This document shows, in pieces, positions 62,729 through 64,000 of a stretch of DNA of 64,000 bases. Within the stretch, counting starts at the first letter, position 1. Each line of letters begins with the position of its first letter. The stretch comes from Podarcis liolepis (Eukaryota): NCBI GenBank assembly GCA_965112155.1, contig OZ218115.1. The stretch is one strand, 5' to 3'. Position numbers and translations under genes: made by a program. The notes below the pieces were generated by a model. It did not search any database, was not told the DNA's origin, and saw only the letters and a program-made list of their open reading frames with translations.

Positions 62729-62818
62729 TCAGCAGCTACACTTCTCTCTGGCTGCCCCTTCTGGTGGCCTGGTCTCCAGGTGAACTGAGTCCGGTTGTGG
62801 CTCTTCAGGTACCCTCCG
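62729..62818 (-). CDS. RAB7-like GTPase, last exon (hypervariable tail plus CXC prenylation motif)
   Basis: ttccacctcag|CGG...: RRVPEEPQPDSVHLETRPPEGAAREKCSC*. Confidence 0.88.
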   Translation of the reverse strand, partial: RRVPEEPQPDSVHLETRPPEGAAREKCSC

Positions 62819-63030
62819 CTGAGGTGGAACAAAAAGAAAAGTGGTGAGGGGGCAAGTGGTTGGTGCAGATGGGTAAAGGCATGAGATGCAGGCTGTTGGG
62901 AAGGACTTTGTCTTATAAGAAAGTTGAAAGCTGGGAAAGGTGTTGTTTTTTTAAGGGATAAAAGCAATCTCAAAGGTATGTGGTCTGTCCGGGGCCTTAT
63001 AAGGGCAGGGCTGAAAATGAGGTTTCTTAC

Positions 63031-63156
63031 ATTCTTTAGTACAGCCCGTATGGCCCACTCAAACACCTCCTGCACGTTGGTGGCTTCCTTGGCGCTGGTT
63101 TCAAAGTATTTGGCTTCATGAAGCTTGCTCCACATTTCTGCTTCCTCAGAAGACAC
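63031..63156 (-). CDS. RAB7-like GTPase exon (G5 box)
   Basis: VSSEEAEMWSKLHEAKYFETSAKEATNVQEVFEWAIRAVLKN|gtaaga; compare RAB7A YFETSAKEAINVEQAF. Confidence 0.92.
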
Positions 63157-63701
63157 CTGGACAAAAACAGGGCTTGGGCATACTCTGCTCTCTTCCCAAT
63201 TCCATCTGCAGCTCTTAATCAAAAAGCTTGTGGTCTTTTTAGTGTACACAATGAGAGCAAATCTGTAAGATAATATAATTCTTCCCCAGATACCAAATTC
63301 TACATCTCTGCTCAACAATTATGCCAAAGTCCTCTGGTGAAGCTGTTCATTAGGATACAATATTCCCTGAACTTTCTGTCCACTCCCCGTCTCCTTGAGT
63401 CATTGCAAAGAGAACTTTTACAGCCCCCTAACAGAACCCCTAAAGAGTTCTGACCCCTAACTACTCCAACCCAATATGTCTGAGAGCCACACAGGATGTG
63501 GACTTGTGCCCTGCACCTGGCTTCATATGTAGCCCTGCCCAGTGGCAGACTTTGGGCTTTAAAATTTCAGCAGTGCACTGTGCAATGCCAAAATCTGGAG
63601 GGTGGGGGTGGCGCCTCTCGCCTTCCGCTGTTTGCTATTGTTGCAGGGCCCCCTTAGCTTGGCAGCCAGTGTGGGTGGGTGTGGGTGAACCTCTGCCCCA
63701 C

Positions 63702-63920
63702 CTCACGGTTCTCCAGGTCCATCTTGTTCCCAATGACAGCAGTGGGGAAAGTGGGCTCTTCCTCTGGCTCAATCTGCAACAGGAGCTGCTTGTGCCACTT
63801 CTCCAGGGCTTGGAAAGAGCTGACGGATGTGACATCGAAGACGAGAAGGCAGCAGTCTGACCCCCGGTAGAGGGCAGTCCCCAGTGCTTGGAACCTTTCT
63901 GTACCAGCTGTGTCCCAAAT
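63702..63920 (-). CDS. RAB7-like GTPase exon (G3/switch II to G4)
   Basis: [73 protein letters not shown]; 73 codons, aligns without gaps to the RAB7A exon IWDTAGQERF...GNKIDLENRQ. Confidence 0.93.
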
Positions 63921-63988
63921 CTAGGTGCAAGAAGGGATAGAAGCTGAGACCTTGATTTCAAGACATCCCTGGGTCCTTGGTGACTTAC

Positions 63989-64000
63989 CTCCATTAATCT
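63989..64000 (-). CDS. Possible 3' end of the preceding RAB7-like exon (cut by the window edge)
   Basis: AGATTAATGGAG|gtaagt strong donor; phase 0 gives ...RLME, but this implies a short 68-nt intron. Confidence 0.45.

What the first reader, a model, noticed from the sequence alone, without database searches (positions are those of the whole stretch)
62729..64000. Intact divergent Rab7 paralog beside HCFC1, where human has RENBP: candidate third vertebrate Rab7 ohnolog
Seen: three clean, in-phase minus-strand exons with no stops. They have RAB7A-type intron positions (IWD...ENRE | V...LKN | tail), GNKMD, ETSAK, the CC pair after YRGxD, a CSC end and an AATAAA. It is therefore neither a retrocopy nor an obvious pseudogene. 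Known: vertebrate RAB7A is nearly invariant, while this protein differs at many positions, and RAB7B reads DTGGQ. Human has no Rab7 gene next to HCFC1, whose 3' neighbour is RENBP. RAB7A (3q21) and RAB7B (1q32) lie in regions paralogous to Xq28 (plexin-A, ATP2B, L1CAM-family and SRGAP/ARHGAP4 paralogons). Inference: this is the Xq28-paralogon Rab7 copy from whole-genome duplication, kept in squamates and lost in mammals, and essentially uncharacterised.
Basis: partly seen in the sequence, partly recalled or inferred. Interest (0 to 1): 0.8.

Follow-up and report, generated by a model that had tools for sequence, protein, structure and literature searches.

The report
Lizard copy of the Rab7c gene
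The last three exons of an expressed, correctly spliced lizard gene for Rab7c, an old and almost unstudied sister of the endosome switch protein Rab7 that was named in 2009 from fish and frog, was thought lost in amniotes, and always carries threonine where Rab7 has its catalytic glutamine.

Summary
Three minus-strand exons (63920-63702, 63156-63031, 62818-62729) encode the C-terminal 144 residues of a Rab GTPase. RNA-seq shows both junctions, minus-strand transcription and a 3' end 11 nt past AATAAA.

The gene is not new. The tree puts it, with strong support, in one clade with Xenopus tropicalis NP_989167.1, which Mackiewicz & Wyroba (2009) named Rab7c and attributed to the 1R/2R genome duplications. 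NCBI predicts it as "Rab-7a-like".

Rab7c occurs in sharks, rays, ray-finned fishes, amphibians, squamates and both monotremes. No bird, turtle, crocodilian or therian copy was listed. The 2009 inference of loss in amniotes therefore needs correcting.

A squamate-only duplicate of RAB7A is rejected (AU p = 1e-29). Whether the split from RAB7A is vertebrate-specific stays unresolved: the ML tree places Rab7c outside all animal Rab7, but a vertebrate origin is not rejected (p = 0.16-0.25).

In 42 Rab7c sequences, Q67T (41), F77L (42), T22S (41) and K38R (39) are near-fixed, while the nucleotide-binding and lipidation motifs are invariant. I infer a membrane-anchored Rab7-like switch with poor intrinsic GTP hydrolysis and altered partners; this is untested.

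The parts
63702..63920 (-). Coding exon a of Rab7c (73 codons, [10 protein letters not shown]...[10 protein letters not shown]): switch II, the C83-C84 pair and the NKxD motif
   Evidence: Translation. Pfam Ras 2e-20. Best PDB match RAB7A, 2e-26. RNA coverage and junction reads.
63900..63902 (-). Codon ACA = Thr at the position of the catalytic Gln67 of Rab7
   Evidence: Thr in 41 of 42 Rab7c sequences against Gln in 25 of 25 Rab7.
63157..63701 (-). Intron, 545 nt, GT..AG. Its 3' end (63157-63213) is an in-frame alternative acceptor used in the NCBI 'isoform X1' model
   Evidence: Joint 63153>63699 (cut +3): 20+3 reads plus contigs. 63157-63213 translates to the 19-aa insert of P0002. RNA depth there is about 1-2 against 25-33 in the exon.
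63031..63156 (-). Coding exon b (42 codons, VSSEEAEMW...ETSAK...AVLKN): the G5 SAK motif and the last helix
   Evidence: Translation. Pfam Ras 4e-7. 100% identical to the Podarcis lilfordi model. RNA coverage.
62819..63030 (-). Intron, 212 nt, GT..AG
   Evidence: Joint 62818>63031: 11+18 reads plus a spliced contig.
62729..62818 (-). Last coding segment (29 codons + TGA): hypervariable tail ending in the CSC double-prenylation motif
   Evidence: Translation. An xCxC end in 40 of 42 Rab7c sequences.
62473..62728 (-). 3' UTR, 256 nt
   Evidence: RNA-seq depth and the end of the spliced contig at 62473.
62484..62489 (-). AATAAA polyadenylation signal, 11 nt upstream of the transcript end
63921..64000 (-). 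3' part of the next intron upstream. The remaining coding exons (about 60 N-terminal residues) lie beyond the window
   Evidence: RNA depth is 0 at 63953-64000. Loose ends behind 63922 encode ...NIDGRKLTVQ, as in P0002.
43247..57956 (+). Context: HCFC1 exons seen on the + strand (Kelch_HCF exon, HCF repeats 50621-52645, Fn3 exon 57585-57956). HCFC1 is convergent with Rab7c
   Evidence: Pfam Kelch_HCF 2.8e-24. PDB HCF C-terminal chain 1e-59 to 4e-61. ORF list.
26634..27509 (-). Context: TMEM187, single coding exon, divergent from HCFC1
   Evidence: Pfam TMEM187 1.8e-102.

Best explanation
The window holds the 3' three exons of the lacertid (Podarcis-type) orthologue of Rab7c. Rab7c is a gnathostome-wide paralogue of Rab7 that Mackiewicz & Wyroba first named in 2009.

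Shown:
- The gene is transcribed from the minus strand, spliced at canonical sites and polyadenylated.
- Its product belongs to a strongly supported clade that includes the published Rab7c of Xenopus tropicalis.
- The clade's internal branching follows the species tree from sharks to squamates and monotremes.
- Every guanine-nucleotide and Mg-binding motif, the C83-C84 pair and the C-terminal CxC prenylation motif are invariant or nearly so.
- Q67T, F77L, T22S and K38R are near-fixed clade signatures.

Inferred mechanism:
- Rab7c is a geranylgeranylated, membrane-bound GTP/GDP switch of the late-endosome/lysosome group.
- Its intrinsic GTP hydrolysis is crippled by Thr67, as with Thr61 in Rap and the Q67L mutant of Rab7. 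Switching off would then depend on a TBC-type GAP, which supplies Arg and Gln fingers in trans.
- Effector choice is shifted by Leu77 in the hydrophobic triad, His8, and a tail unlike the RILP-binding tail of RAB7A.
- GEF coupling may be altered by Arg38. That is the Rab32/38 state of the lysine that Mon1-Ccz1 inserts into the pocket of Rab7.

The gene most likely arose from Rab7 at the base of vertebrates or gnathostomes. It was later lost in therian mammals and, judging from the hit lists, in turtles, crocodilians and birds.
For: Gene structure and expression:
- Exons and motifs.
- Junction reads, strand and 3' end.

Orthologues:
- Squamate orthologues are 80-99% identical over exons a+b.
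- 118 of the 121 sequences fetched by then carry WDTAGTERF.
- NP_989167.1 sits in the same 90% cluster as the Xenopus laevis hit. The paper's supplement lists it as 'Rab7c'.

Phylogeny:
- Careful ML tree: Rab7c clade 98/94, squamates 100/99, monotremes + squamates 97/73, window exons with Podarcis/Zootoca 100/98.
- Squamates + RAB7A as one clade is rejected, p = 1e-29.
- Several species have both RAB7A and Rab7c: Nanorana, Lithobates, Oryzias, Nematolebias, Denticeps.

Constraint:
- Site table.
- Between sister species, exons differ by 3 fixed changes in 435 nt (2 synonymous). The intron differs by 18 mismatches plus indels in about 545 nt.

Literature for the mechanism:
- TBC dual trans-finger; the Rab's own Gln only helps GAP binding (PMC5902227).
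- K38 is strictly conserved in Rab7 and used by Mon1-Ccz1; Rab32/38 have Arg (PMC5216073).
- C83/C84 palmitoylation and S72 phosphorylation (bioRxiv 10.1101/2024.04.01.587555).
Against: - No biochemical or cell-biological data exist for any Rab7c. The hydrolysis-poor and altered-effector readings are inference from other GTPases.
- The N-terminal 60 residues (P-loop, switch I, position 38) are not in the window and are read from orthologues.
- The ML tree places Rab7c outside all metazoan Rab7 (97/91). Taken at face value, that argues against a vertebrate-stem duplication.
- Absence from birds, turtles, crocodilians and therians rests on the top 120 and top 150 hits of two searches, not on genome searches.
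- dN/dS was not computed. The three-substitution comparison is only indicative.
- S72A, noted by another reader, is not a clade feature. Ser is kept in 34 of 42.
Confidence: 0.85

Rival explanations
1. Rab7c is older than vertebrates. On this view it is a pre-metazoan or early-metazoan Rab7 paralogue that survives only in jawed vertebrates, not a 1R/2R ohnolog of RAB7A.
For: The careful ML tree, rooted on a Rab9-like sequence, puts the whole Rab7c clade outside a group holding all invertebrate Rab7, Capsaspora Rab7, RAB7A and RAB7B (97/91). The same happened in the 2009 protein tree.
Against: - No Rab7c-type (T67/L77) sequence from any invertebrate or cyclostome appeared in either search.
- The Rab7c stem and the outgroup are both long branches, so long-branch attraction is expected.
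- AU tests do not reject Rab7c+RAB7A (p = 0.159) or Rab7c+RAB7A+RAB7B (p = 0.249) as clades.
- The 2009 nucleotide trees placed Rab7c at the base of vertebrate Rab7a.
- The two intron positions seen here coincide with those implied for RAB7A and RAB7B by read-through isoforms.
Confidence: 0.12
2. The locus is a transcribed but decaying copy: a pseudogene in the making, or a gene without protein-level function in lizards.
For: - Rab7c evolves much faster than RAB7A. Only 58 of 174 core sites are invariant, against 132 of 174 in Rab7.
- The catalytic Gln is missing.
- The gene has been lost in several amniote lineages.
Against: - The reading frame is open across three exons, with the same exon structure and length in at least 12 squamate genera.
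- G1-G5 motifs, C83C84 and CxC are invariant in 42 sequences spanning about 450 My.
- T67 itself is fixed, not variable.
- Splicing is accurate and stranded, at moderate depth.
- Exons are about five-fold less diverged than the intron between sister species.
Confidence: 0.03
3. It is the squamate orthologue of RAB7B or RAB9, or a recent duplicate of RAB7A, that has diverged fast.
For: - UniProt automatic names call several members 'Rab-7b', and NCBI calls them 'Rab-7a(-like)'.
- Exon b alone scores best against RAB9A in the PDB.
Against: - Identity over exons a+b is 43% to RAB7B, 45% to a Rab9-like sequence and 52% to RAB7A, against 55-63% to fish, frog and platypus Rab7c.
- RAB7B reads DTGGQ and has a one-residue deletion. 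This gene has neither.
- The tree and AU test exclude a squamate-only RAB7A duplicate.
- Xenopus tropicalis has separate Rab7a, Rab7b and Rab7c entries.
Confidence: 0.02

Closest known systems
Rab7c of Danio rerio (NP_001013496.1) and Xenopus tropicalis (NP_989167.1), Mackiewicz & Wyroba 2009, BMC Evol Biol 9:101
   Same: Same orthologous clade (98/94), with a direct accession link. It shares the His at consensus position 8 that the paper noted, and the divergent tail. The paper proposed the same origin, 1R/2R WGD before the jawed-vertebrate radiation.
   Different: - The paper knew only two sequences and inferred loss in amniotes. Here the gene is intact and expressed in a lizard, and is present across squamates and in both monotremes.
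- The paper does not mention the Q67T, F77L or K38R signature.
RAB7A / Ypt7 (late endosome-lysosome Rab)
   Same: - Best structural-database match for exon a: 58% identity over switch II to NKxD.
- Same two intron positions, ENRx|V and LKx|.
- Same C83-C84 pair, CxC end, Y37, F45 and W62. T58, A76 and G80 are kept in most sequences (30, 30 and 38 of 42).
   Different: - About 48-52% identity overall.
- Q67T, F77L, T22S, K38R and D16N are fixed or nearly so.
- L8 is mostly His.
- The V180/Y183 region is not conserved.
- It evolves several-fold faster.
Rap1/Rap2 (Thr61), and Rabs that naturally lack the catalytic Gln, such as Rab25 (Leu) and Rab24 (Ser). These are recalled from my own knowledge and were not tested here.
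   Same: A natural, fixed replacement of the catalytic glutamine. In Rap the residue is also Thr, intrinsic hydrolysis is very slow, and the GAP supplies the missing catalytic residue in trans.
   Different: - Rap and the Rabs are different small-GTPase families.
- RapGAP uses an Asn thumb, whereas Rab GAPs of the TBC type supply Arg and Gln fingers (PMC5902227).
- No kinetic data exist for Rab7c.
RAB7B (tetrapod Rab7 paralogue, endosome-to-Golgi)
   Same: Another fast-evolving vertebrate Rab7-type paralogue, with the same intron position after ...DRK.
   Different: - It keeps Gln67 but reads DTGGQ.
- It has a one-residue deletion near position 115.
- 43% identity over exons a+b.
- It falls in a separate, very long branch.

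Membership tests
Rab family of small GTPases | Ras-type G domain with G3 DxxG, G4 NKxD and G5 SAK motifs | tested here: met
   Pfam Ras 2e-20 and 4e-7. DTAG, GNKMD and ETSAK are in the window.
Rab family of small GTPases | C-terminal double-cysteine geranylgeranylation motif | tested here: met
   The window protein ends ...EKCSC*. xCxC in 40 of 42 clade members.
Rab7c clade (Mackiewicz & Wyroba 2009) | Groups in a tree with the published Rab7c sequences, apart from Rab7a, Rab7b and Rab9 | tested here: met
   The clade includes X. tropicalis NP_989167.1, with 98/94 support. The zebrafish NP_001013496.1 itself was not retrieved.
Rab7c clade (Mackiewicz & Wyroba 2009) | His at consensus position 8, where other Rab7/9 groups have Leu | tested here: met
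   MFRRSHLKILL in lacertid orthologues P0002 and P0003. His in 30 of 41 clade members. The residue lies off the window.
Rab7 subfamily proper (RAB7A/Ypt7) | Catalytic Gln67 in DTAGQE | tested here: not met
   The window reads DTAGTE. Thr in 41 of 42 Rab7c against Gln in 25 of 25 Rab7.
Rab7 subfamily proper (RAB7A/Ypt7) | [quoted passage not shown] | tested here: not met
   Arg in 39 of 42 Rab7c, including lacertid orthologues. The residue is off the window.
Rab7 subfamily proper (RAB7A/Ypt7) | Hydrophobic triad F45-W62-F77 | tested here: not met
   F45 and W62 are kept. Position 77 is Leu in 42 of 42 Rab7c and in the window (ALYRG).
RAB7B | DTGGQ switch II and a one-residue deletion near position 115 | tested here: not met
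   The window has DTAGT and no deletion. It falls in a separate tree branch.
Rab9 | Groups with Rab9A/B; GDGGVGKS P-loop context | tested here: not met
   Exon b scores best to RAB9A. However, the full-length orthologues read GNSG[AV]GKS...LMNQYVN...ATIGADFL, as in Rab7, and the Rab9-like sequence is the distant outgroup in the tree.
2R ohnolog set RAB7A / RAB7B / Rab7c | Duplication node at the vertebrate stem, with invertebrate Rab7 as outgroup | tested here: inconclusive
   The ML tree says otherwise (97/91), but AU does not reject the vertebrate clades (p = 0.159 and 0.249).
2R ohnolog set RAB7A / RAB7B / Rab7c | The three genes lie in paralogous chromosome blocks (Xq28-, 3q21- and 1q32-like) | not testable with these tools
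Human map positions are from memory.

The most novel reading that the evidence does not exclude
Rab7c is a naturally 'locked-on' late-endosomal/lysosomal Rab that has been kept for about 450 million years. Thr67 abolishes intrinsic GTP hydrolysis, as in Rap proteins. Leu77, His8 and the new tail redirect it to effectors other than RILP and retromer. Arg38 couples it to a different tri-longin GEF, BLOC-3-like rather than Mon1-Ccz1. Its independent loss in therians and in turtles, crocodilians and birds would then mark the loss of a specific organelle pathway that fishes, amphibians, squamates and monotremes still use.
Probability: 0.25. Interest if true: 0.65.

Novelty: new member of a known kind. 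Interest (0 to 1): 0.45.

Why it matters
Rab7 is one of the five near-indispensable Rabs and a disease gene. A second, conserved Rab7-type switch with a fixed replacement of the catalytic glutamine has gone essentially unstudied, because human, mouse and chicken lack it.

This work corrects the published picture of loss in amniotes. Squamates and monotremes keep the gene, and here it is shown to be expressed.

It also defines a four-residue signature (S22, R38, T67, L77). Each of these residues points to a direct test: GTPase and GAP assays, GEF specificity, and effector binding. All are feasible in zebrafish or Xenopus, which carry the gene.

It also flags a naming problem. Databases call these proteins Rab-7a, Rab-7a-like, rab7 or Rab-7b.

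Tried and rejected
- 'RLME|gtaagt' at 64000-63989 as the end of a fourth exon: rejected. RNA depth is 0 and the real upstream exon ends ...RKLTVQ.
- Zebrafish rab7ba/rab7bb as the same gene: rejected. Those are 88% identical to rab7a.
I therefore have no upstream exons, no flanking genes in other species and no coding DNA for dN/dS.
- The 50%-identity representatives library returned many fused or mis-spliced models. I used it only to reach named RAB7A and RAB7B clusters.
- A mixed RAB7A+RAB7B profile search was meant to fetch many RAB7B sequences. It gave only Mus and Camelus, so RAB7B is thinly sampled and sits on a very long branch.
- Wu et al. 2005 (Rab7-RILP structure, PMC1142575) is not held. 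The RILP-contact argument rests on a review.
- Accession and gene-symbol literature searches for Rab7c members found nothing. Klöpper 2012 does not mention the clade.
- The LEM-domain fusion in a frog model could not be assigned to emerin or to LEMD1, so it is only a lead.
- The joined spliced model was never built or searched. Full-length analyses used database orthologues (P0002-P0004 and others).
- No human sequence was fetched or compared.
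Full report
**What is in the window**

Reading the minus strand of 62729-64000 and translating by reference gives three clean phase-0 exons.
- Exon a, 63920-63702: [30 protein letters not shown]...[10 protein letters not shown].
- Exon b, 63156-63031: VSSEEAEMWSKLHEAKYFETSAKEATNVQEVFEWAIRAVLKN.
- Exon c, 62818-62729: RRVPEEPQPDSVHLETRPPEGAAREKCSC, then stop.

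Each exon is bounded by ag/gt, and an AATAAA sits at 62489-62484. Pfam assigns exons a and b to the Ras family (2e-20 and 4e-7). Against solved structures, exon a is closest to RAB7A (2e-26) and exon b marginally closer to RAB9A. The most striking residue is the Thr in DTAGTERF, where Rab7 has its catalytic Gln67.

**Expression**

One search for sequencing runs and one laying of reads settle this.
- Two stranded RNA-seq runs of a closely related species cover exactly the three exons and 256 nt of 3' UTR. Their first mates lie on the + strand, so the RNA comes from the minus strand.
- 11+18 reads cross 62818>63031 and 20+3 reads cross 63156>63702. Both introns are GT..AG on the minus strand.
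- An 848-nt contig from what is evidently the window's own species (0-1 mismatches) is the spliced mRNA: 62473-62818 | 63031-63156 | 63702-63922. It continues upstream with sequence encoding ...NIDGRKLTVQ.
- The upstream exon therefore lies beyond the window. The tempting 'RLME|gtaagt' at the window edge is intron, with RNA depth 0.
- The transcript ends 11 nt after AATAAA.
- Between the two species the 435 coding bases carry three fixed differences, two of them synonymous. The 545-nt intron carries 18 mismatches plus indels. That is a small-sample sign of constraint.

**Which gene it is**

Exons had to be searched separately, so I queried exon b through the stop-free ORF that contains it (window:62575-63318:-, region 55-96).
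- This found predicted proteins of Podarcis lilfordi (100% over exon b), Zootoca, Pogona, Phrynosoma, Naja, Candoia, Varanus and Salvator. They are named 'Rab-7a-like', 'Rab-7a' or 'Rab-7b', and all read DTAGTERF.
- The window's species is a lacertid very close to P. lilfordi: 142 of 144 residues are identical.
- A full-length search with the clean Pogona model P0004 returned 120 listed hits. After further squamates (74-87% identity) came frogs, salamanders, caecilians, echidna, bichir, gar, paddlefish, many teleosts, sharks and rays (49-64%).
- 118 of the 121 sequences fetched by then carry WDTAGTERF, one has Ser and two are fragments.
- Cluster look-ups added platypus, skinks and geckos.
- No bird, turtle, crocodilian or therian sequence was listed, although such orthologues would be expected to score above the teleosts.

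**It already has a name**

Mackiewicz & Wyroba (BMC Evol Biol 2009, PMC2693434) described a well-supported clade of two 'highly diverged vertebrate sequences' from Danio rerio and Xenopus tropicalis.
- They called it Rab7c and placed it at the base of vertebrate Rab7a in nucleotide trees.
- They attributed it to 1R/2R whole-genome duplication.
- Their supplement gives the Xenopus accession as NP_989167.1. That very sequence (P0423) is in the 90% cluster of my X. laevis hit and falls in the clade with the window's exons.
- Their diagnostic His at position 8 is present in the lacertid orthologues (MFRRSHLKILL).
- The zebrafish rab7a/rab7ba/rab7bb trio is a different matter. Those are 88% identical to one another and are RAB7A-type.
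- In the searchable literature, vertebrate Rab7c appears only in the 2009 paper. That paper does not discuss the catalytic glutamine.

**Phylogeny**

The careful IQ-TREE run used 73 rows and 205 columns under LG+C20+F+G4. Rows were 44 Rab7c including the two window exons as separate rows, 11 vertebrate RAB7A, 13 invertebrate Rab7, Capsaspora Rab7, 3 RAB7B and one Rab9-like outgroup.
- The Rab7c clade has 98/94 support.
- Inside it the order is Chondrichthyes (100/99), Actinopterygii (100/97), then Tetrapoda (100/98). Within tetrapods come amphibians, then monotremes + squamates (97/73), with squamates at 100/99.
- The window exons join Podarcis and Zootoca (100/98).
- This is the pattern of a vertically inherited gene as old as jawed vertebrates.
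- Forcing the squamate genes to group with RAB7A costs 99 log-likelihood units (AU p = 1e-29).
- Several species have both a canonical RAB7A and a Rab7c.

The deeper question is not answered by the tree. Rooted on the Rab9-like sequence, Rab7c falls outside all animal Rab7 (97/91). Two long branches meet there, which is the classic long-branch-attraction setting. Constraining Rab7c+RAB7A, or Rab7c+RAB7A+RAB7B, is not rejected (p = 0.159 and 0.249). Taxon distribution favours a vertebrate-stem origin, since no invertebrate or cyclostome member was found. Shared intron positions are consistent with it. Read-through isoforms of RAB7A diverge exactly after ENRQ|V and LKQ|V, and a RAB7B isoform after EDRK|. 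Neither line of evidence proves it.

**Genomic context**

- The window holds TMEM187 (26634-27509, minus strand, Pfam 1.8e-102).
- It also holds HCFC1 on the plus strand: a Kelch_HCF exon, HCF repeats at 50621-52645, and an Fn3 exon matching HCF C-terminal chain structures at 1e-59 to 4e-61.
- Rab7c is convergent with HCFC1, and their 3' ends are a few kb apart.
- That human has RENBP at this place, and that Xq28, 3q21 and 1q32 are paralogous, is established map knowledge that I recall. I did not test it.
- One weak lead: an Ensembl model of the frog Leptobrachium fuses an N-terminal LEM domain (2.3e-15) to Rab7c. This implies a LEM-domain gene just upstream. The Atlas could not say whether it is emerin-like or LEMD1-like.

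**How it probably works**

Shown, across 42 Rab7c sequences against 25 Rab7 sequences:
- G15, G18, G20, K21, T40, D63, G66, N125, K126, D128, S155 and K157 are invariant.
- So are F45, W62, R69, F70, Y78 and the C83-C84 pair, which is the palmitoylation site of RAB7A.
- 40 of 42 end in xCxC.
- Fixed or near-fixed differences from Rab7 are T22S (41/42), K38R (39/42), Q67T (41/42), F77L (42/42), D16N (37/42), V85L and I13L.
- L8 is mostly His, and the V180/Y183 region is unconserved.
- S72 is kept in 34 of 42 and is Ala only in some members, the window included. The 'kinase-insensitive' reading of note s1-845518 therefore applies to lacertids at most, not to the family.

Inferred:
- The protein binds GTP and Mg and is doubly geranylgeranylated, so it is a working membrane switch.
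- Thr at the catalytic position should make intrinsic hydrolysis very slow, as with Rap's Thr61 and the Q67L mutant of Rab7 (my own knowledge).
- It may still be switched off, because TBC GAPs bring both Arg and Gln fingers in trans and the Rab's own Gln only helps GAP binding (PMC5902227).
- Leu77 alters the hydrophobic triad that effectors read. The tail that RILP refolds in RAB7A is unrelated in Rab7c. Effector choice is therefore probably different.
[quoted passage not shown] Rab7c has Arg. It keeps Y37 throughout and T58, A76 and G80 in most sequences (30, 30 and 38 of 42). Its GEF may therefore be Mon1-Ccz1 working through Arg, or something else.
- None of this has been tested in any species.

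**Verdict**

Three points need correcting.
- The clade was already described and named.
- It is not squamate-restricted.
- Mammals have not wholly lost it.

What is new is modest but real. Amniote retention contradicts the published inference, expression is shown in a lizard, and the clade has a fixed S22/R38/T67/L77 signature. I rate it a new member of a known kind, with interest 0.45.

- No human sequence was consulted.

Noticed in passing
window 63157-63213 (-): An in-frame alternative 3' splice site 57 nt upstream of exon b encodes SCRWNWEESRVCPSPVFVQ. This is the 19-aa insert in the NCBI 'isoform X1' model of Podarcis lilfordi (P0002). RNA depth there is about 1-2 against 25-33 in the exon, and no junction was reported, so this isoform is minor or a prediction artefact.
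   Followed up: partly
window 63810, 63885, 62807; polymorphic 63867, 63084, 63043: The sister species in RNA runs X23/X24 differs from the window by one non-synonymous change (63810, Gln37His of exon a) and two synonymous fixed changes. It is polymorphic at three more coding sites, one of them non-synonymous (63084, Ala25Thr of exon b).
   Followed up: partly
P0143 / P0275 (Astyanax mexicanus): This is the only Rab7c member with Ser instead of Thr at position 67 (WDTAGSERF). It also has T22 and sits on a very long branch (0.91), so it may be a relaxed or neo-functionalised copy in a characiform.
   Followed up: no
P0031 (Leptobrachium leishanense), residues 4-41: An Ensembl/UniProt model fuses an N-terminal LEM domain (Pfam 2.3e-15) to a complete Rab7c. 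This suggests a LEM-domain gene directly upstream on the same strand in this frog. Emerin-like or LEMD1-like could not be decided.
   Followed up: partly
window 50621-52645 (+): A 674-aa open exon of HCFC1 carries about nine copies of the HCF proteolytic-repeat core (...[19 protein letters not shown]...), interspersed with degenerate NPPCQT.QT copies. Pfam has no model that hits it.
   Followed up: no
P0007 and P0011 (Naja naja); P0016 and P0434 (Gekko kuhli): Two separate Rab7c models exist per species. In the cobra, one is on a chromosome and one on a 14.8-kb contig. In the gecko, two are on the same contig and flagged UNVERIFIED_CONTAM. These may be assembly duplicates or local duplications.
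   Followed up: no
database names of P0002-P0121: The same orthologous gene is named Rab-7a, Rab-7a-like, rab7, rab7-like, Rab-7b or 'uncharacterized' in different records. UniProt's automatic 'Rab-7b' is misleading, since RAB7B is a different gene.
   Followed up: yes
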